From the NCBI GenBank assembly GCA_964057225.1, contig OZ059898.1:5518001-5582000 (forward strand): a stretch of DNA of 64,000 nt, given 5' to 3'. The translations under genes were made by a program, and so were the position numbers. The DNA comes from Auanema rhodensis (taxonomy: Eukaryota > Animalia > Nematoda). Under the pieces are notes generated by a model that worked only from the letters and a program-made list of their open reading frames with translations, did no database searches and had not been told where the DNA came from. This document shows positions 2,234-11,634 of this stretch, piece after piece (within the stretch, counting starts at the first letter, position 1; each line of letters begins with the position of its first letter).

Positions 2234-5200
2234 TTAACCTTCTGTATTGGAATGATGATGCTGCTTCATGTGCTGACTGAACCGAAGCACACAATCTTGC
2301 TGGAAGTCTCGCTCGCAAGATTCTGCATAAGCAAAACGGTACAAAACCTGTAATTAAGATATCTGCTCTCTGAATATTTTAAGACAATAGTACCAGAAAA
2401 ACCAGAACGTGCATGAACAATAGGTAGAAGAAGAAAGTTAAACGAGCAGATGCCGATGACATAATAGCTCGTCCCTTAATCAAGTTTGATGAATGAAATG
2501 AAAACCATAATCACTGACAATGCTCAAAGATGCTCGGTCATGAATTTTCAACTTCGTATAACTCCTTTGATTTTCTTGTTGACTGAATTTACGGAATAAA
2601 TCCAATTTTTTTTCATATGGTTCATTATAGTTAGTAGATGTTTCTAACGGTATGGACACCTCGTTATTACCGTTGTTGTTTCCTTCAAATTTGAAAAAAA
2701 ATTGAATATGGACACCAAGTTACCGTAGCATTGAAGAAATTTGATTTTTCCATACATTTTAACATTATCCTCTTTTATTTTATCAATTTCTGCATTTAGA
2801 ACACCTTGCCTGGCTTTCTCTACGGAGAGTTCCTAAATAAATATTTTTGTGTTCAAAAGGGGTATGTGAAACGACTTCTTCTAGCTGCTCGACCTTCAAT
2901 CTCAAACGGTCCCTCTGAGCTGTCAAAATAGCTATCACACTTCCTTCTTCTGTTTGCCTCGGATTTTGTTCTGCACCTAATGATTCAAGAACTTCTAACG
3001 TACTCATTTCCATATGCTCCTTATTTTGAGCCTAAAGTCCAAATTCTCTTTATATGTTATTACAATGTATTTATTATTTAAAATATTGTAATAGGCGTGA
3101 ACCCACCAATGATCCTTGAGAGACCATGCTTAGATCTTTTTCCAGTTGCTTGATCAACTCATCCTGCCTTGAACACTTTTCTTCATATTCTGATAAAAGT
3201 GATTCCTGATTTGAAACGGTTTCTACAAGAATAAATATAGTTTTAAAAACCCCGGCTCCCATTTTTTGTTTAGTACGCGCGCATGTGTTGGTCCTACTAT
3301 ACAGTTAGTATTTCAAAAATACAGTTCATTGTTAGAAAAAAAGCAAAAAAAAAAATTAAAAAACGAGATTGTGCATCAACCGGCTAATGAGATCAACAAG
3401 GAATGGTTATAAACAAGAGATCAAGAAATAAACTAGATTGAACACAATTGGCAACAAATAAGTGATCAGGAGGAAGTAAAAATATGATTATTATAATTAT
3501 TATATGAAAAAAATTATCTAAATTGAGCTATAAAAGAGGAAGAGCTATATACACCATGGCAAGAACTCAGCCGCAGGCCGACATGACTAGTTTAGAGACA
3601 TATAATAAATACAAACATACACATTTTGCAAATTAAATTATGATACCATAAAATATAAAACTCATATATAAATATTTTAAAAAACTAAGAAGATTTTGAT
3701 GCCGCCAATAGCTTCATCTTAGCCACTGCTTTATCGAGTTGACTAGGTCGTTCTTTTTCAGTGGTATTTTCAAGTTCTTCTCGAATTTCTTCATTCGAGA
3801 ACAGTGGTGGAAATGGCACCATTGTTGGTAAGTTTGTATCTAAACCACCTTGAGAAGCAACTTGATCTAACATATTTGCTAAGTCCTGAAATGGTTAAAT
3901 GTCATAAACATATAAACACATAAGAGAGCGGAAAGTCATAACCGCAAAGAGAATGAGAAAATCCCAAAACTAACTTGTTGCCAATTTTTACTTTTCGGTA
4001 AAGATGCTACCGCTGATGAGTAGACTTTTCCTTCTTTGAGACTGGCTTTTTGTCTCGTGCGATGATTGTGGAACCAATTATTAACTGTTCGTATATTTAA
4101 ATTTAATTTCAAGGACAGCTGTAAAAGGTGGAATTATTTTTGAGAGGACTGGTAAACAAAGTAAGAAAACAAAATGACGAAGGTTTCCGTGAAACGAAAT
4201 ACATACCAATTCAATTGTTTTTTGGCTTGGGTGATGTTCATGCTGGAATACAAAACGTAAAGCTTCTTTTTGCTGATCCGTAATAATTGTTCTCTGAAAT
4301 CCAGATTGCTATAAAAATCAAGTACCATTGATTCATGATAATCTGTTTTTACCTGAACTTTTCGAGGAGTCGGACAATCAAAAGAAGTATCAGGCAACGT
4401 GCGTTTTCCATTTTCATTCACGGTCTCGCTTGAACTAGCAGATTCAATCTAAAATTAACCAATATAAATCTATGTGATGATCAACACAAACTCTTTCTTT
4501 GGCTAACAGCTTGGTTACTGCATCTTTATCTTCAAGAAAAATTTTCATTTTCAAATATGGTTCTTTACTACGAGAGTTCAATGTACTCCAGGGTCGAGGA
4601 CGGAGGAAAATCTCAGAAGTGCCACCGGCTGATATTCCTAACACTGATTCTCCAAACATCTAGAAAACCAGAGTTTTTAAAAAATTAACAAGAAAAAATT
4701 TACTCTTTGTGAAATGCCATGCATATGAAGCCGATCTTTAATCTTTCTTACAAGTGATGCAGTATCGAGATCTTCCATATTTTGGTCAAGCGCACATAGC
4801 TAAAAAGAGAAAAAAAATTATGAATAAATGAGAAATAATTTACCCGCTCTAAATGAGAAAAGGGCATTTGTTCACTTTTAATTTGAGTTTTATCTAAAGG
4901 AGTGGTTGTTATTATAACACGCAGAGGATTAGGCTTAGGAGGTGCTTCTGTAAATATGTTAATAAATAAACAAGAACAAATGTTTTATCTACCTAATTCT
5001 TCGGCTAGTTCTTCAAGAATGATAATTTCATCACTGGAATCATCAGATGGATCCTTTCCCTCCGATTCACTAATGCTGTGTCGAGATTCTTCTGCAGTTT
5101 GCGCTACTTCTTGCATGAACAGTTTCATTCGAATGAAAGGTTCTCGACCCTTTTGGGTGAGCATATTCCACTGTTTTGGACGCGCTAACAAATCCGAAAC

Positions 5201-8200
5201 AGATCCTTGGCTTAATCCCAAAACATGCTCGCCAAACTGTCTTTGTGATATTGAATTCATAGATAAAAATTCTTTAATTTGTCTGACAACATCTTCAGTA
5301 TCAATATGACCAAAGATCTCAAACTCTTCTTGCGTAATAGGTAGCAAACCGACTTTCATACGAGAACTCATTACCTAAAAAGCATATGTAACATATTTTC
5401 GAACATAGATAACAACCTGATGAGCATGATTGATAGACGCCATACGTTCACTATGAGACATTTCGTGGTAAGATGAGTTAAGATCTTCCATCTGACAAAT
5501 TTATTATGTATAAATACTTGAAGTATACACACTTACCTTTCTAACGTGACCTGAGCCAATAGTCCTACTAGCAATAGCTCGTTCCAAGTTTGTTTCTTGT
5601 TCCCGCAACTTGGCTAACTCTGATTGAAAAATACTCATTATTTTCTCTTTAGGAATGTCATCATGACGCCAACGACTGTTTCTTTGTGTGGAGCCCGAGT
5701 TGGCAGCTTGTGGGGTTCCTGCCAAACGATACTGAAAATAAAGAAAAACTGTATATTATGATACGCATAGAAAATATACCTGATCTTCTCTAGCGCTACT
5801 CACACGCTTTATAATTTTTTCTCCAGGGTCTTCAGGTGGTAGTTTACCACTATTGCTTTCCCATAAAGATTCAGAGGAAGGATGATCAACCTTTACTTCT
5901 CCATCTTAAAAAAAGGTGAATTTTCTTCTAATACCAAAAGAAAATACCGCTAGGCCAAACGCGACGAGGACTTAAAGAACATAACAATTCGATTGCTTTA
6001 TCGTCGGAAATCCAACCATAAATTCGTCTGAACGCTTCACGACCCTATAAAAATAAAAATTAGTATTTTTCCAAAACGTTGCTAAATCACCTTGTCTGTT
6101 AATTTGCTCCAGTGACGTGGCTTAGAAAGCAGCTCACTGAGAGAACCCTGAGACTAAAATAAAAAGCATTAACATCATTGATGAAAATCATGAAAAAAAT
6201 CAATAAAGCATAAAACGCAGAGCGACACAAAGAACATAAGCTTAAGCATTCACCTTTACTACCTGATTCATGACATATTTAGCAAAGAGGCGTTGTCCAA
6301 TGTTATAAGCCACCATCAGCCGTTTGCACTGTTTTGCGATTTCAGCAGTATTCAAAGCTCTACTGCCCAATGTCCTTATGTTTGCAGCAACAAGACTCTA
6401 AACATAAATAAAAATGAATGAAAGACATAGAAATTGCTTAATTAAGAATTAAAACTAAAAAAATCATATGCGACAAATAGTATGAAGGTATACCTGAAGT
6501 TCTTGAATAGCTTTTATTTCCTGGGGAGTCTTAGACGGCTCGCCTGAATAATTTGTCAGTTTCGGAGAATAGCGAAACTGTTCGAAAGGAATGTCAGATT
6601 TGTTATCAGGAGATTCTCCATTTTTCTTCGATGAGGAGTAAGCAGACGGAGACAAAGAACATTCTTTTGGAGTGGAGGGTAGTGCATTATTCGTTTGAGC
6701 CTAAATATTAATTATACTTAGTTTTGGTTGCAGAATTTACCATCAAAATTTTCAACAAATTTGGTTTTTCATCATCGTTTGAAAGTGAAGTGCTAAGAGA
6801 GCTTGGAAGCTTTTCTTGAGTTTTCTTTGCACGTAGAATCTAGAATAAGAAATATTAAGAGTCTGTTAATCAGAAATACCTGGCGATCTAAAGCAGATTC
6901 TAACTCAGGATCAATAAACTTTTCTGCTACTTCTCTGCCGATCTTTTTAGAGACAGCCTCAACCACTGCATGGTGGCTGCCAGCCAAAATAGCTTGCATA
7001 ATTTCATCCCCTGTAAACGCGAATTCCAAAAAAAAAATGGTGGCATTGAATCACCAGTCCACGACATCGAACAGAACAAAAAAAATATAAGAAAATCTAC
7101 AACATCAAGCAATCAATACAACACAATTGAAAATATCTGAAACCATGCATATAAAACACTAAGCATAAATAGGACCAACACACTCTCGTTATATATCTTT
7201 TCTTATTAATGATATTGAATATTTGTTACTAATTTTCTGCGCTATGCATGCAAATAACTTGGCGAAAAAAACATACCACGATATTTTTCATTTGAAACTC
7301 TTAACTCCGCATTGGAATTCTGAAGTCTTCTGTTTTTCTCTGCCAGAAGTTTATCAAGGGATTGAACTGTTTCTCCTAATTTCAAAATTGATTCTTCGTT
7401 GGCAGATGCAGCTTCTCCGAATTCAATCTCTCTCAAGAGTCTGTAAAATGCCAATTGCCCTTTAATTACTGGTTCAATTCTAACCTTAATTCCTTCTTAA
7501 TAGCTTCATAGTCTTGTTGATCAGTAAGCTTAGATTCAAGATCATTGATTAAATCCACTTGCTTCTTAATCTCTTTCTCCATATTTTCAAATTTGAGTTT
7601 GTAAGATTTAGTATCTACTTGGATAGAATCTGACAAGCGTTGGTTTTCAGCACGAAGAAGAGAGATCTGGTGATTAAATAATTGTTTTGTTTATACATGC
7701 AAAAAGTTACTTGATCATCTTTTTCTTTCATTAAACTTCCAATAACAGCAATATCCTCTAATCCTCCACGTTTTGATGCTGTTTGAGCTTCTGCCAAATC
7801 ACTAGTCAAGCGTTCCACTTCGCGTTCAAGAATAGACTATAAGGTTTCTTCAATTTACAGCAGATTGTTCATAAAAAACACATACCACCCTTCGATTAGC
7901 TGACTCCAGGTCACGGCTCAGAATTTCTATTTGCTCGGCTTCTAGAGATTCTTTTTGATCTGCTCTTATACGAGCATTATCAAGTTTGCGTTGTGCCTCC
8001 CTCATTTTTATTTCTAATTCACTAATCTAAAAAAGAATACTATGTATTGCTCATGTCCACATAAGCATACCTTTTTTTCCAATAAAATATTCTCGTTTTT
8101 CAGCTTCTCTGCTCGCATATTCATTTCAAACTCACGGGCAGCAAATTCTTCTTTGAGTTTGCGTTCAGTGTCAGTAATAGATTGCTCGACCTCGTTTGTT

Positions 8201-11200
8201 TTCTCCCCCTCAAGCTGCTTTATGCGTTCTCGCAACTTACGAATGGTGACATCTATAAACAAAACAGACAATTTCAATGAAAAAAGAAGTTACAAACAAT
8301 TTCAAATTAGTAAGTGAAGATTATATGCAAAGAGTGGATTACCTTGATTTTTTAAGTCAGCGAATTCCGCGTGAAGATCAGAGATAGAGTTTCTGAGTTG
8401 CTCGGCTTCTTCAATAGCGTTATTAGTTCTTTCAGCCTGAACTTTCCAGAGAGGAGCTTTCAATAGAATGGGAAGGGGATCTGCAAATTTCAATATAGTA
8501 ATGCTAATTTTGTAAAAGAAAAAGGGAGGAAAGTGAGAAAATTTGGACTTCAAATAGCATTGACCGTTTACGATATAGATCGGTACAAGTATCACACAAA
8601 ATTCAATTTTCAATTAGTTATAACAAGATATCATCAAAAGCATCAGCTTAAAGGTTATGCTATTGATACAAACTTAGCGATAAAGCACATTTGCTTAGAA
8701 TAAATAAAGAATGGACGAAAGTTCATGAATGTTGAGCAAGTGGTACACATCCATCTATTTCAGTATCGAAAATCGAATCTCCTTCTTTGGGAGGGAAAGG
8801 AGGCGCGCGATTCATCATCGATCGCCTATGGCTATTGCCATTCTCAGGGAGAGGGAGAAATCAGCAATCCACGCTGAATGAACAACAGGGCTCGAAGCTC
8901 AGACATACACATACACAGGCCTTGGTTCTATTTCCGAGCTGGTCGTTGTTGAAAGCACAGAGGGCAAAACAAAATACGACTACTATGCCTGGGACGGTTA
9001 AGGTACGACTTTATAAAATACGGTTATAGAAATCATAGTTCAGCTCAATTCTCAGTGAATGTTTGCAAAATTTCTGTTTCCAAACTAAGACACAAATTGT
9101 AAACAAACAATTAAACATTATCATCGATAAAGAATATAAAAACGCTAAATTGTAATAAAGTAAAGGTGATAATTAAATATAATTATGTAATATATTTTGC
9201 TCATAGTTTATATAGTGGATAATTAAATATAAAAAATCGTGACAAAATTATATTCATAAAAAAATTTATATATATAAAGGCCACCAATATATTCACGATT
9301 CCTTTTTCATAGACATCATTCGTAAAAAAAAATTATTTTTTTCATAAGCCAATGAAGGACTAGTGACCAAACGCCCAATCATCAGTATTGGGCCGGCTGT
9401 GGGGTATCGATCAGTAGTAACCAAGACTGGCTCGAGCCATTTATGATCGATCTGGGCGGAGCAGTCAGCCACCGTAGCCAATTGATCCTAGCGATTTGAG
9501 CTTCCAGGACCCAGAGAAGAGAAATCGAAGAAATAAACAATTTTTCAATTTCTTTGAGCACAAAACAACTTTCATAAATCGATCAGCTTCTTCTAAGTCG
9601 TTTGATGATTGTCATGGTCTTCGCACAAGATGTCTATTACGCTAAGCAAAAATTTCTTTCGACGAAAGACCACAATACTCTATATGAATAAAAAGATGCG
9701 AAAAAATATTTTCCTTCTTAGTTCTCGAACAAAGAAGAGAAAGAGAAAATGCCAATTATGAAATGATAATTGAATTTGATCGCGATCAGAAAATCATCTC
9801 CGATAACTATATTTTTGTAAAAAATAAAGATAGATATAGTATATGTATCAATGAATATATAAATACATCTATTCATTGGTGCCTACATTGTAAATACGAT
9901 GGTTTGCCTCCTAAAGAAACCAATGAATGATCAAAATTTTTTTTCTTATACTATCCAAGAAAGACCTATTGTAGCAATAATCTCATTTTTTCATTATAAC
10001 TCAACTAATCTCATGAATAAGACTATGATGGTAGAAGATTGGTTGGTTCTTTCAAGATGAAGATTCATTTCGATTTTGAATCTTCTTCATAATGCAATTT
10101 CCTTTTATTATTTCTCTGACACCACAATCGTCAAGCGACAGAAAATCAATCAGCTGGGCCTTCGTTGAAAATGTACCCGAGTGCTGGCCATAGATGGCAG
10201 CTTGTGTGGATCAATACACTCAGCAAGACAGCCGATATTCCCGCTTTGAGCTACTCCGATAGATGGCATCGATTGGGGGGGGGGGGCACCAACTAATTAC
10301 CACGAAGCAGCGAGGAGCACAGCAAACCAGATTGATAGCCATCTCAATTCTAACTTCAAAACACGAATTTGGAAATACGATAAATAAAATAATGAATCAG
10401 ATGATCTAAAGGATTAATGCAGTACATAAAGTCAGAAAAGGATTAAAAAAGGAAAAATGGAATTTAACATGTATTCAAGCAAGCATATTATGATCCATTA
10501 CATGCAACGCTGGATGAAGAACATACCTGGAAGATTCACAAAACGTGCACAGATATCAATCAATGAGGCTTCAGTTGCTTTGTTACAGCTTGTTAGTCGA
10601 TCAACTTCTTTTTGAAAAGCTTTAATTAAGGGCACAGCAACTTTGCGCGTCTCCTATAAATGGCAGAAAGAATCTACAGTTTCGTTTCAAAAAAATGCCT
10701 GGTTAGTAGTAAGAAATTATGAAAAGGATGGAGAGCAGGAAGATAAAGAAAAGCATAAGGAGACGACAGATTATTCTATATTCTAAATCAGGAGTCTTCA
10801 GCATAACTATATAATGTGAATGAAACGAACACAAGACAAAAAACAGCTCATATTGAATATATAGCACACTAAATGCATGCTGATATAAGTGATTGGATCA
10901 TCTGCTATTTGTTCCAATTTCTGGCTCAACCAATTATTTAATCAATCAATACAAGATACCATCTGTCCCCAATTAATTACCACCCTTTGATCCTCCTTAT
11001 ATGGTTCTGCGTTACATTTTTAAAACAAAAAAAATTAATTTAGGTGAACATTAAAAATCAGGTTAAACATATTTCGGACCACTACAGTGCATGCATAAAT
11101 ACCCTTTCTTCAACTTCAAATAAAGCATTCAATACCATAACAATTCTTAATTTAATGCGCTGAGCAAAAATTTTGTGTAGTTTGCAATTAATTGCACGTG

Positions 11201-11634
11201 TAAGTAAAAAGTTTAATTCTTAACCTTTAAAAATATATAAGGTTGACTAGAAATAACAAGAAAAAATGAAATAAACCCGTAATTAGATATATAGATATAA
11301 AATTATACAAAACAATATGTAAAATAACAATTAGATAATAGCAAACATTACTAAGATAGAGAATAATGAACTTGAAAAACAGAAAAAGAAAACCAAGCAC
11401 CAACCAAAAGGAGCATCAAATACTAACCTTGGTAGTTACTTGACGATAGGCATTACTCGCTTCTAGCAATATAAGTTTGCATTCATCGTCATCATCTTGC
11501 CTTGCTTCAATAGATTTTATTTCTTCTTCAACACGATTCTTAAAAAAAAAAACATAAGAATTGCTCTTGATGATTGTGGTTACCTGAAAATTGTCCCATT
11601 CTAAGGATTCCCAGGCTTTAGCAATTACATCCAT
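2234..11634 (-). CDS. cone-1: CASP golgin isoform of the CUX/CASP locus (shared N-terminal coiled coil + CASP C-terminus with TM anchor)
   Basis: Shared exons start [17 protein letters not shown] (11634) and end at a phase-1 donor at 7277 (KYR-G|gtatgt). A phase-1 acceptor at 3222 continues [22 protein letters not shown], then the TM segment [18 protein letters not shown]; stop TAA at 2234-2236. Confidence 0.88.
3278..3315 (-). other. 3' arm of a long-range pre-mRNA duplex (partner 7152-7188)
   Basis: TGTGTTGGTCCTA at 3284-3296 and TTAGTATTTCA at 3305-3315; arm ends ~55 nt upstream of the CASP acceptor. Confidence 0.75.
3685..11634 (-). CDS. ceh-44: CUX-class CUT homeobox protein (3 CUT domains + homeodomain), alternative product of the same locus
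   Basis: The same donor (7277) joins in phase 1 to the acceptor at 7010 (GDEIMQA). CUT1 [31 protein letters not shown]2 [31 protein letters not shown]3 [22 protein letters not shown]; homeodomain with [14 protein letters not shown]. Confidence 0.93.
7152..7188 (-). other. 5' arm of a long-range pre-mRNA duplex (partner 3278-3315)
   Basis: 7170-7182 TAGGACCAACACA is the exact reverse complement of 3284-3296; pairing extends on both sides. Confidence 0.75.
8800..10340. promoter_or_regulatory. Candidate intronic CUT-site (ATCGAT/ATCAAT) enhancer cluster in ceh-44/cone-1 intron 3
   Basis: Six ATCGAT and several ATCAAT/ATTGAT sites, mostly within three GC-rich patches. Confidence 0.55.

What the first reader, a model, noticed from the sequence alone, without database searches (positions are those of the whole stretch)
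3278..7188. Long-range RNA duplex that loops out the entire CUX cassette: candidate structural switch for CASP vs CUX splicing
Seen: one donor (7277) has two in-phase acceptors, CUX at 7010 (266-nt intron) and CASP at 3222 (4054-nt intron), in a genome whose introns are typically ~45 nt. On the pre-mRNA strand, 7182-7170 (UGUGUUGGUCCUA) pairs perfectly over 13 bp with 3296-3284 (UAGGACCAACACA). Pairing continues inward across small bulges (UAUGC/GUAUA, then UUAGUGUUUUA 7162-7152 / UGAAAUACUAA 3315-3305) and outward (CGAGAG/UGCGCG with A.G mismatches), ~35 bp in all. The imperfect inner positions are G-U pairs on the transcribed strand and would be A-C mismatches on the other, which favours an RNA structure. 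The arms lie ~90 nt from the donor and ~55 nt from the CASP acceptor, so pairing would cut the effective intron to ~145 nt plus the stem. Established: CUX and CASP arise by alternative splicing from one locus, and in C. elegans the CUX form is neuronal and depends on UNC-75/CELF. Inference: the stem sets the default CASP route, and protein binding to the UG-rich 5' arm, or polyadenylation before the 3' arm is transcribed, releases the CUX route. I do not know of this structure being described, but could not search.
Basis: partly seen in the sequence, partly recalled or inferred. Interest (0 to 1): 0.92.

Follow-up and report, generated by a model that had tools for sequence, protein, structure and literature searches.

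The report
RNA bridge looping out CUX cassette
Two short complementary sequences, one just after the shared splice donor and one just before the CASP acceptor, are kept complementary in five nematode species while their letters change, so they probably pair in the pre-mRNA, loop out the whole CUX homeobox cassette and favour the CASP (Golgi protein) splice.

Summary

- **The duplex:** On the minus strand, 7182-7170 pairs perfectly over 13 bp with 3296-3284. The pairing extends to 7188-7140 / 3327-3278 at about -41 to -44 kcal/mol. None of 100 dinucleotide shuffles and none of 87 same-geometry genomic controls reach it.
- **RNA evidence:** Contigs from four runs of one study carry the 7277->3222 junction, which skips 4054 nt.
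- **Conservation:** Auanema sp. JU1783 has 18 bp, and an unidentified rhabditid has 20 perfect bp. Both share the core UGUG(U/G)UGGUC / GACCA(A/C)CACA, with four compensatory pair changes and species-specific extensions. Necator americanus (17 bp) and Angiostrongylus cantonensis share a different core, CAUCGUGCAG / CUGCACGAUG, at equivalent positions, spanning loops of 9-15 kb.
- **Absent elsewhere:** C. briggsae and C. remanei show nothing significant.
- **Mechanism (inferred, untested):** An RNA bridge juxtaposes the donor and the CASP acceptor and encloses the CUX acceptor and a likely poly(A) signal.
Binding of UNC-75 to the 5' arm is not supported. The strongylid arms are not UG-rich, and the conserved UGUUGU(G/A) motifs lie outside the arm.

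This is a new member of a known kind; the closest example is the Drosophila Nmnat stem.

The parts
7277..7439 (-). Last exon shared by the CASP and CUX isoforms. Its last base is 7277 and the GU donor is at 7276-7275.
   Evidence: The translation matches CUX1_N-type shared exons of Auanema JU1783 at 91%. RNA joints 7440/7485 and 3222/7277 support the boundaries.
7140..7188 (-). 5' arm of the long-range duplex. The perfect core is 7182-7170, and the 10-nt core conserved among species is UGUGUUGGUC at 7182-7173.
   Evidence: It is the unique best partner of the 3' arm in the 4-kb intron.
7129..7187 (-). Predicted local imperfect hairpin that competes with the long-range pairing for the 5' arm in this species.
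   Evidence: In a fold with the loop deleted, the MFE uses this hairpin. Enforcing the long-range stem costs only 3.7 kcal/mol, and the core pair probability is 0.2. This is prediction only.
7095..7127 (-). Conserved UG-rich block with two UGUUGUA motifs (7123-7117 and 7104-7098). It is the likelier CELF/UNC-75-type site and lies inside the loop, 87-106 nt upstream of the CUX acceptor.
   Evidence: It is nearly invariant between the two Auanema species. UGUUGU(G/A) occurs at comparable places in L001 and L004, and similar blocks occur in C. briggsae and C. remanei. The C. elegans UNC-75 motif is UGUUGUG (PMC11789633 supplement).
3685..7010 (-). CUX cassette: three CUT domains, a homeodomain and the C-terminus. 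The acceptor AG is at 7012-7011 and the stop codon TAG at 3687-3685. The duplex loops all of this out.
   Evidence: ORF frames, spliced RNA contigs spanning 3194/3365-7012/7137, and homology to CUT/Homeodomain proteins.
3389..3422 (-). Two GAUCUC motifs (3422-3417 and 3394-3389) in the CUX 3'UTR. They are candidate seed matches for the miR-58/80-82 (bantam) family.
   Evidence: There are 1-4 copies in the same region of all seven species, against 0.07-0.19 expected. That this miRNA family restricts a target to neurons comes from PMC4335502. The seed sequence itself is recalled from memory.
3325..3330 (-). AAUGAA, a PAS-like hexamer and the probable CUX poly(A) signal. It lies at the inner edge of the 3' arm.
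   Evidence: It is conserved in Auanema JU1783, and AAUAAA occurs at the equivalent place in L004, 24-47 nt upstream of the 3' core. The cleavage site has not been mapped.
3278..3327 (-). 3' arm of the long-range duplex. The perfect core is 3296-3284, and the core conserved among species is GACCAACACA at 3293-3284.
   Evidence: The 7-nt motif GACCA(A/C)C that starts the core ends 64, 65 and 66 nt before the CASP acceptor in the three species that share the core.
3107..3222 (-). First CASP-specific exon. The acceptor AG is at 3224-3223.
   Evidence: The RNA joint 3222<->7277, skipping 4054 nt with GU..AG ends on the minus strand, appears in all four runs. CASP_C homology lies downstream.

Best explanation
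The two arms form a long-range intramolecular RNA duplex, an 'RNA bridge', in the CASP/CUX pre-mRNA.

**What is shown.** The arms exist and are far more stable than chance allows. They are each other's unique best partners in the intron. Their complementarity is maintained across five species by compensatory changes and by replacement of the arm sequence.

**What is inferred.**
- The duplex can form only in transcripts that have neither spliced to the nearby CUX acceptor (which removes the 5' arm) nor been cleaved at the CUX poly(A) site (which probably lies just upstream of the 3' arm).
- Once formed, it encloses the CUX acceptor, all CUX exons and the CUX poly(A) signal in a 3.3-15.5 kb loop.
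- It shortens the path between the shared donor and the weak, distant CASP acceptor to about 95-170 nt plus the stem, and so favours the CASP splice.
- The CUX route is taken when the proximal acceptor is activated early. This is probably done by a CELF/UNC-75-type factor on the conserved UG-rich block inside the loop, before the 3' arm is transcribed.
For: Stability and uniqueness:
- Window duplex -28.8 to -29.2 kcal/mol at 25 nt, and -41 to -44 kcal/mol when extended.
- 0 of 100 shuffles and 0 of 87 natural controls reach it.
- The arms are unique reciprocal best partners in four species.

Conservation of the Auanema-type core:
- Auanema JU1783 has 18 contiguous bp at -30.2 kcal/mol (z -6.9). 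The unidentified rhabditid L004/L005 has 20 perfect bp at -38.9 kcal/mol (z -8.6).
- A common 10-bp core carries compensatory changes at four pairs: U-A<->G-C, C-G<->U-A, U-A<->G-C and U.G<->A-U. One further one-sided change gives U.G. No substitution breaks a pair that is shared by both species.
- The helix extends on different sides in different species.

Strongylids:
- N. americanus has 17 perfect bp at -32.7 kcal/mol (z -6.2).
- Its core CAUCGUGCAG / CUGCACGAUG is shared with the top-ranked duplex of A. cantonensis.

Geometry:
- The 5' arm lies 41-95 nt after the donor, and the 3' arm ends 53-89 nt before the CASP acceptor, while the loop varies from 3.3 to 15.5 kb.
- In folds with the loop deleted, the core pairs with probability 1.0 in L001 and L004.

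RNA and literature:
- The CASP junction 7277->3222 is in four runs. The 266-nt intron is partly retained, and RNA reads through the 3' arm.
- PMC11789633 states that default CASP splicing occurs 'via as yet unknown means'.
- In Drosophila Nmnat, a stem that loops out a proximal acceptor and terminal exon is required for use of the distal acceptor (PMC2724269).
Against: - There is no in vivo structure evidence and no mutational evidence.
- All RNA evidence comes from assembled contigs of one study. The 7277->7010 junction was not among the 15 joints displayed.
- In the window species, the predicted MFE of the loop-deleted RNA prefers a local hairpin for the 5' arm, and the long-range core has probability 0.2.
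- No significant arms were found in C. briggsae or C. remanei. The longest conserved complementarity there is 7 bp.
- The A. cantonensis duplex is not significant on its own: 15 of 100 shuffles reach it, or 3 of 42 with a positional prior.
- Only five species and two core types were examined, so the covariation counts are small.
- The 5' arm must stay unspliced and available while 3-15 kb is transcribed.
Confidence: 0.6

Rival explanations
1. The duplex mainly blocks the CUX poly(A) site rather than helping splicing. By pairing the sequence immediately downstream of the CUX poly(A) signal, it prevents cleavage so that transcription can reach the CASP exons. Bringing the splice sites together would be secondary.
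For: AAUGAA (window, L001) or AAUAAA (L004) lies 24-47 nt upstream of the 3' core. The extended window arm begins at the hexamer itself. RNA contigs read through this region into the CASP exon. Introns with both alternative acceptors and internal poly(A) sites are enriched for such stems in Drosophila (PMC2724269).
Against: The cleavage site is unmapped. The spacing of the 3' arm to the CASP acceptor is tightly kept at 64-66 nt in three species, which points to the acceptor as the reference point. PAS positions in the strongylids were not examined. This explanation is not exclusive of the main one.
Confidence: 0.2
2. UNC-75/CELF binds the UG-rich 5' arm itself and melts or pre-empts the stem in neurons, which releases the CUX route.
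For: The 5' arms of Auanema and L004 are GU-rich (GUGUGUUGGU, UUGUGUGGUGGU). UNC-75 promotes CUX and excludes CASP in C. elegans neurons (PMC11789633). There is precedent for an RBP site inside a box: Rbfox in Dystonin (PMC4174434).
Against: The strongylid 5' arms are not UG-rich. Exact or near-exact UGUUGU(G/A) motifs lie outside the arm. Mutating UGUUGUG to A7 in C. elegans lowered CEH-44 rather than raising it. No arms were detected in the two Caenorhabditis species examined.
Confidence: 0.12
3. The two boxes are independent protein-binding motifs that only happen to be complementary, or they are a neutral inverted repeat with no function.
For: Each core is conserved in sequence within its clade, so motif conservation alone could explain part of the signal. 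The antisense energy is as good as the sense energy in two species.
Against: Four compensatory double changes occur and none breaks a pair. The helix extensions differ between species. A completely different core sequence with the same geometry is found in strongylids. No shuffle reaches the observed energy in four species. There is no repeat family in the window.
Confidence: 0.06

Closest known systems
Drosophila Nmnat intron 4 stem (Raker et al. 2009, PMC2724269)
   Same: Complementary boxes bracket a proximal alternative acceptor and an alternative terminal exon that carries its own poly(A) site. The stem is needed to use the distal acceptor and yields a protein with a different C-terminus.
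   Different: Here the loop is 3.3-15.5 kb and holds a whole multi-exon transcription-factor cassette of about 17 exons in this window. Box 2 lies downstream, not upstream, of the putative poly(A) signal. The animals are nematodes, and there has been no experimental test.
Conserved long-range intronic complementary boxes ('RNA bridges') catalogued by Raker 2009 and IRBIS (Pervouchine 2014, PMC4174434), including multi-exon skipping in Ca-alpha1D and Dystonin
   Same: The boxes lie within about 150 nt of the donor and acceptor. Complementarity is conserved, they are associated with alternative and weak acceptors, and they loop out exons.
   Different: The arms here turn over in sequence between clades, which k-mer conservation methods would miss. 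I found no mention of ceh-44, cone-1 or CUX1 in the text held for those papers.
UNC-75/CELF-dependent cone-1&ceh-44 switch in C. elegans (Leyva-Diaz et al. 2025, PMC11789633)
   Same: It is the same ancient locus with the same two routes from one donor. A UG-rich element sits in the intron before the first CUX exon.
   Different: That work describes a protein factor that promotes CUX, and says the default CASP splice is achieved by unknown means. It does not mention RNA structure.

Membership tests
Long-range intronic RNA structures that modulate alternative splicing (Raker 2009 / Pervouchine type) | Two complementary boxes in intronic sequence, one near the donor and one near the acceptor (within about 150 nt) | tested here: met
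   The 5' arm lies 41-95 nt after the donor. The 3' arm ends 53-89 nt before the CASP acceptor in five species.
Long-range intronic RNA structures that modulate alternative splicing (Raker 2009 / Pervouchine type) | Stability beyond chance and a specific partner | tested here: met
   z scores are -5.0, -6.9, -8.6 and -6.2, with 0 of 100 shuffles reaching the observed energy in four species. 0 of 87 natural controls reach it. The arms are unique reciprocal best partners.
Long-range intronic RNA structures that modulate alternative splicing (Raker 2009 / Pervouchine type) | Complementarity conserved across species, with compensatory substitutions | tested here: met
   There are four double compensatory pairs among three species with the Auanema-type core. 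A second core type is shared by two strongylids. The feature is not met in C. briggsae or C. remanei.
Long-range intronic RNA structures that modulate alternative splicing (Raker 2009 / Pervouchine type) | The bracketed intron is alternatively processed | tested here: met
   The CASP junction 7277->3222 and spliced CUX-cassette contigs occur in the same four runs. The CUX junction 7277->7010 itself was not displayed.
Long-range intronic RNA structures that modulate alternative splicing (Raker 2009 / Pervouchine type) | Opening the stem changes splice choice, and compensatory mutations restore it | not testable with these tools
   This needs a minigene or CRISPR experiment.
RBP-versus-structure competition switch (RBP site inside one box, as for Rbfox in Dystonin) | A conserved RBP motif lies within an arm | tested here: not met
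   The UGUUGU(G/A) motifs lie outside the 5' arm in the window, L001 and L004. The strongylid arms are not UG-rich.
Transposon terminal inverted repeats / MITE-derived inverted repeat | The arm sequence belongs to a repeat family with further copies | tested here: not met
   The 13-mer occurs only at the two arms in 64 kb. One site with a single mismatch has unrelated flanks. Only this window was searched.
Flanking inverted repeats that drive back-splicing (circRNA) | A donor site lies downstream of the looped exons and inside the arms | tested here: not met
   The last looped exon is a terminal exon that ends in a stop codon, a 3'UTR and a PAS-like hexamer, with no donor before the 3' arm.

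The most novel reading that the evidence does not exclude
An RNA bridge across the CUX cassette may be the ancestral, general device that lets the fused CASP/CUX locus produce CASP by default. On this reading its arms turn over in sequence while the geometry is kept. It would then also exist, so far unrecognised, in Caenorhabditis and outside nematodes, including vertebrate CUX1/CASP. It would help to explain why the two genes have stayed fused since early metazoan evolution.
Probability: 0.1. Interest if true: 0.85.

Novelty: new member of a known kind. Interest (0 to 1): 0.62.

Why it matters
CASP/CUX is one of the oldest known loci that encode two unrelated proteins, a Golgi golgin and a neuronal homeobox factor. 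They are made from one promoter by a choice between a near and a far acceptor.

The 2025 C. elegans study identified the factor that turns CUX on in neurons, and stated that the means by which all other cells skip the nearby CUX acceptor is unknown. A conserved duplex that loops out the cassette gives a concrete answer that compensatory mutation can test, at least for Auanema and the strongylid parasites.

It also shows a long-range pre-mRNA structure in nematodes that is kept over loops of 3 to 15 kb while its sequence is replaced. Searches based on sequence conservation would miss such a case.

Tried and rejected
- **Complement alignment score.** A simple Smith-Waterman score did not separate the real pair from shuffles (65 against 61 +/- 9). 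Its scoring is too permissive, so I replaced it with RNAduplex in fixed windows.
- **Unrestricted RNAduplex.** Run on the full segments, it gives a meaningless all-over duplex.
- **Multiprocessing run.** It timed out without output.
- **G-U strand argument.** It holds only in the window species.
- **Mesorhabditis spiculigera (L006).** The locus is too diverged to map the shared and CASP exons, so I left it out.
- **Failed look-ups.** No locus was on record for P0002, P0037 (C. bovis), P0155 (Nippostrongylus) or P0153 (Necator, chromosome assembly).
- **C. elegans.** CEH-44 was not returned by either full-length protein search, so the C. elegans locus could not be examined.
- **Closer relatives.** An exon-level protein search found none with usable contigs.
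- **Rfam.** No match in 3000-7500.
- **IRBIS supplement.** The text held has no ceh-44 or cone-1 entry.
- **Literature.** A search for CUX1/CASP plus RNA structure found nothing relevant.
- **Caenorhabditis.** The best C. briggsae duplex (5147-5168 / 8580-8601, -21 kcal/mol) is positionally suggestive, but it is not significant and is not conserved in C. remanei.

Full report
**1. Locus and observation**

The gene lies on the minus strand. Frame analysis and homology show the following layout:
- shared coiled-coil exons ending at 7277;
- a CUX cassette from 7010 to the stop codon at 3687-3685, with three CUT domains and a homeodomain;
- CASP-specific exons starting at 3222.

The two routes from the single donor remove 266 nt (7276-7011) or 4054 nt (7276-3223), and both keep the reading frame.

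The best protein relative is an 'unnamed protein product' of Auanema sp. JU1783, 83% identical in the CUT2 exon. The window is therefore probably from another Auanema species; this is inference.

The claimed arms are exactly as stated. 7182-7170 UGUGUUGGUCCUA is the reverse complement of 3296-3284. The pairing extends to 7188-7140 / 3327-3278.

**2. Is it more than chance?**

RNAduplex in 25-nt windows gives -29.2 / -28.8 kcal/mol. Dinucleotide shuffles of the two segments give -17.4 +/- 2.3, and none of 100 reach the observed value. In 50-nt windows the value is -41.0 against -25.2 +/- 2.2.

Eighty-seven natural segment pairs with the same sizes and spacing from this window give -19.6 +/- 2.6, with a best of -26.2.

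Each arm is the other's best partner in the whole 4-kb intron, by 11-13 kcal/mol.

The 13-mer is not part of a repeat family in the window. Rfam finds nothing in the region.

**3. RNA evidence**

Four runs from one study hold spliced contigs of this locus, so they are RNA.
- All four carry the joint 3222<->7277, skipping 4054 nt with GU..AG ends on the minus strand.
- The CUX cassette is present as spliced contigs.
- At their 3' ends these contigs run continuously through the 3'UTR, the 3' arm and, in two runs, 29 nt into the CASP exon.
- At their 5' ends they either stop about 2 nt beyond the CUX acceptor or continue unspliced into the 266-nt intron. One run has a contig spanning the whole retained intron.

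The 7277->7010 joint was not among the 15 joints displayed. Ten were not shown, and I can account for eight of those as CUX introns. The CASP route is therefore shown, while the CUX join to the shared exons remains inferred here.

These are assembled contigs, so levels and RNA ends cannot be read from them.

**4. Comparative evidence**

*Auanema sp. JU1783 (L001).* Locus identity is about 70%. Its 5' arm UGUGUUGGUCUGAAUAUC (7497-7514) and 3' arm GAUAUUCAGACCAACGCA (11503-11520) form 18 contiguous pairs at -30.2 kcal/mol (z -6.9).

*Unidentified rhabditid (L004/L005).* This species is known from two Logan assemblies that are 99.7% identical. Its protein identity to Auanema is roughly 50%. AUGCCAAUUGUGUGGUGGUC (5357-5376) pairs perfectly over 20 bp with GACCACCACACAAUUGGCAU (8694-8713) at -38.9 kcal/mol (z -8.6).

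*Pair table for these three species.* Anchored on GGUC/GACC, the table shows:
- a common 10-bp core;
- double compensatory changes at four pairs: U-A<->G-C at offset -2, C-G<->U-A at +4, U-A<->G-C at +5, and U.G<->A-U at +7;
- one one-sided A->G change that gives U.G;
- no substitution that breaks a pair present in both species;
- helix extension on the inner side in the two Auanema species and on the outer side in L004.

The 3'-arm motif GACCA(A/C)C ends 64, 65 and 66 nt before the CASP acceptor in the three species.

*Strongylids.* In Necator americanus (L008), the top duplex between the equivalent segments is 17 perfect bp, ACAUCGUGCAGCUACA / UGUAGCUGCACGAUGU, at -32.7 kcal/mol (z -6.2, 0 of 100 shuffles). 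It begins about 54 nt after the donor and ends 65 nt before the CASP acceptor.

The top duplex in Angiostrongylus cantonensis (L007) is not significant on its own. It uses the same 10-bp core CAUCGUGCAG / CUGCACGAUG at the same relative positions, followed by a 5x5 internal loop and a different 7-bp extension.

The loop enclosed is about 3.3, 3.9 and 4.0 kb in the three rhabditids and about 9.4 and 15.5 kb in the strongylids.

*Caenorhabditis.* In C. briggsae and C. remanei I found no significant duplex. This held with and without a positional prior, and the longest complementarity conserved between them is 7 bp. The C. elegans sequence could not be obtained.

**5. Mechanism (inferred)**

Splicing to the CUX acceptor removes the 5' arm along with the 266-nt intron.

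A PAS-like hexamer lies 24-47 nt upstream of the 3' core: AAUGAA in both Auanema species and AAUAAA in L004. Cleaved CUX mRNAs would therefore probably lack the 3' arm.

Both arms should coexist only in transcripts that have done neither. In those transcripts the duplex would do two things. It would enclose the CUX acceptor, the CUX exons and the poly(A) signal. It would also bring the shared donor to within about 95-170 nt (plus the stem) of the CASP acceptor, which in Auanema departs from the nematode UUUUCAG consensus (CUUGUAG, AUUGUAG). This favours CASP.

This is the logic shown experimentally for Drosophila Nmnat (PMC2724269).

It would fill the gap stated by Leyva-Diaz et al. [quoted passage not shown]

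Their two-colour reporter keeps both introns and reproduces the tissue pattern. That result is compatible with this model but does not test it.

**6.

The UNC-75 site mutated in C. elegans is UGUUGUG, and changing it to A7 lowers CEH-44.

In the window, L001 and L004, exact or one-off copies of that motif lie in a separately conserved UG-rich block between the 5' arm and the CUX acceptor (window 7127-7095). Similar blocks occur in Caenorhabditis.

The strongylid 5' arms are not UG-rich.

CELF binding inside the loop, activating the proximal acceptor before the 3' arm is transcribed, fits better than CELF melting the stem. Neither has been tested.

**7. Caveats**

- In the window species, a fold with the loop deleted prefers a local hairpin (7187-7129) for the 5' arm by 3.7 kcal/mol, giving the long-range core a probability of 0.2. 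In L001 and L004 that probability is 1.0.
- The difference is within prediction error. It could equally be a kinetic trap or part of the regulation.
- The G-U strand argument holds only in the window.
- Five species with two core types is a small sample.

**8. Novelty**

The held literature has no description of RNA structure at CASP/CUX. The kind of element is well known, so I class this as a new member of a known kind.

**9. Side observation**

GAUCUC occurs 1-4 times in the segment downstream of the CUX stop codon in all seven species, where 0.07-0.19 copies are expected. From memory, this matches the seed of the miR-58/80-82 (bantam) family.

That family is expressed in non-neuronal tissues and restricts PMK-2 to neurons in C. 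elegans (PMC4335502). It could form a second layer keeping CUX neuronal.

Noticed in passing
window 3422-3417 and 3394-3389 (minus strand); the same region in L001, L002, L003, L004, L007 and L008: GAUCUC occurs 1-4 times (2-4 in six of seven species) in the segment downstream of the CUX stop codon, against 0.07-0.19 expected. From memory, it is the seed match of the miR-58/80-82 (bantam) family. That family is non-neuronal and restricts PMK-2 to neurons in C. elegans (PMC4335502). It could be a second layer keeping CUX neuronal.
   Followed up: partly
window about 3590-3540, 3470-3420 and 3400-3350 (minus strand); L001 11210-11270 and 11300-11440: The CUX 3'UTR holds blocks of 30-50 nt that are almost invariant between the two Auanema species, for example CUAGUCAUGUCGGCCUG.GGCUGAG.UCUUGCCAUGGUGUA. 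They are far more conserved than the coding exons (about 70% identity), and parts recur in L004. No Rfam match. Function unknown.
   Followed up: partly
window 7011-7276: The 266-nt intron before the CUX cassette appears as an unspliced contig in one run (6982-7305). Another run's CUX contig runs unspliced up to 7137. This suggests slow or incomplete removal, or an internal transcript start upstream of the CUX exons.
   Followed up: no
window 7129-7187 (minus strand): A predicted local hairpin sequesters the 5' arm and is within 3.7 kcal/mol of the long-range alternative. Its 3' half (AUUGCA.G.UUUCAGA.AUUU) is conserved in Auanema JU1783.
   Followed up: partly
L002 5147-5168 / 8580-8601 (C. 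briggsae): A 12-bp-plus duplex, UUUUGCAUGUUUUUGCC / GGCAAAACAUGCGAAA, has its 3' arm about 60 nt before the CASP acceptor. The position is suggestive, but it is not significant against shuffles and is not conserved in C. remanei.
   Followed up: yes
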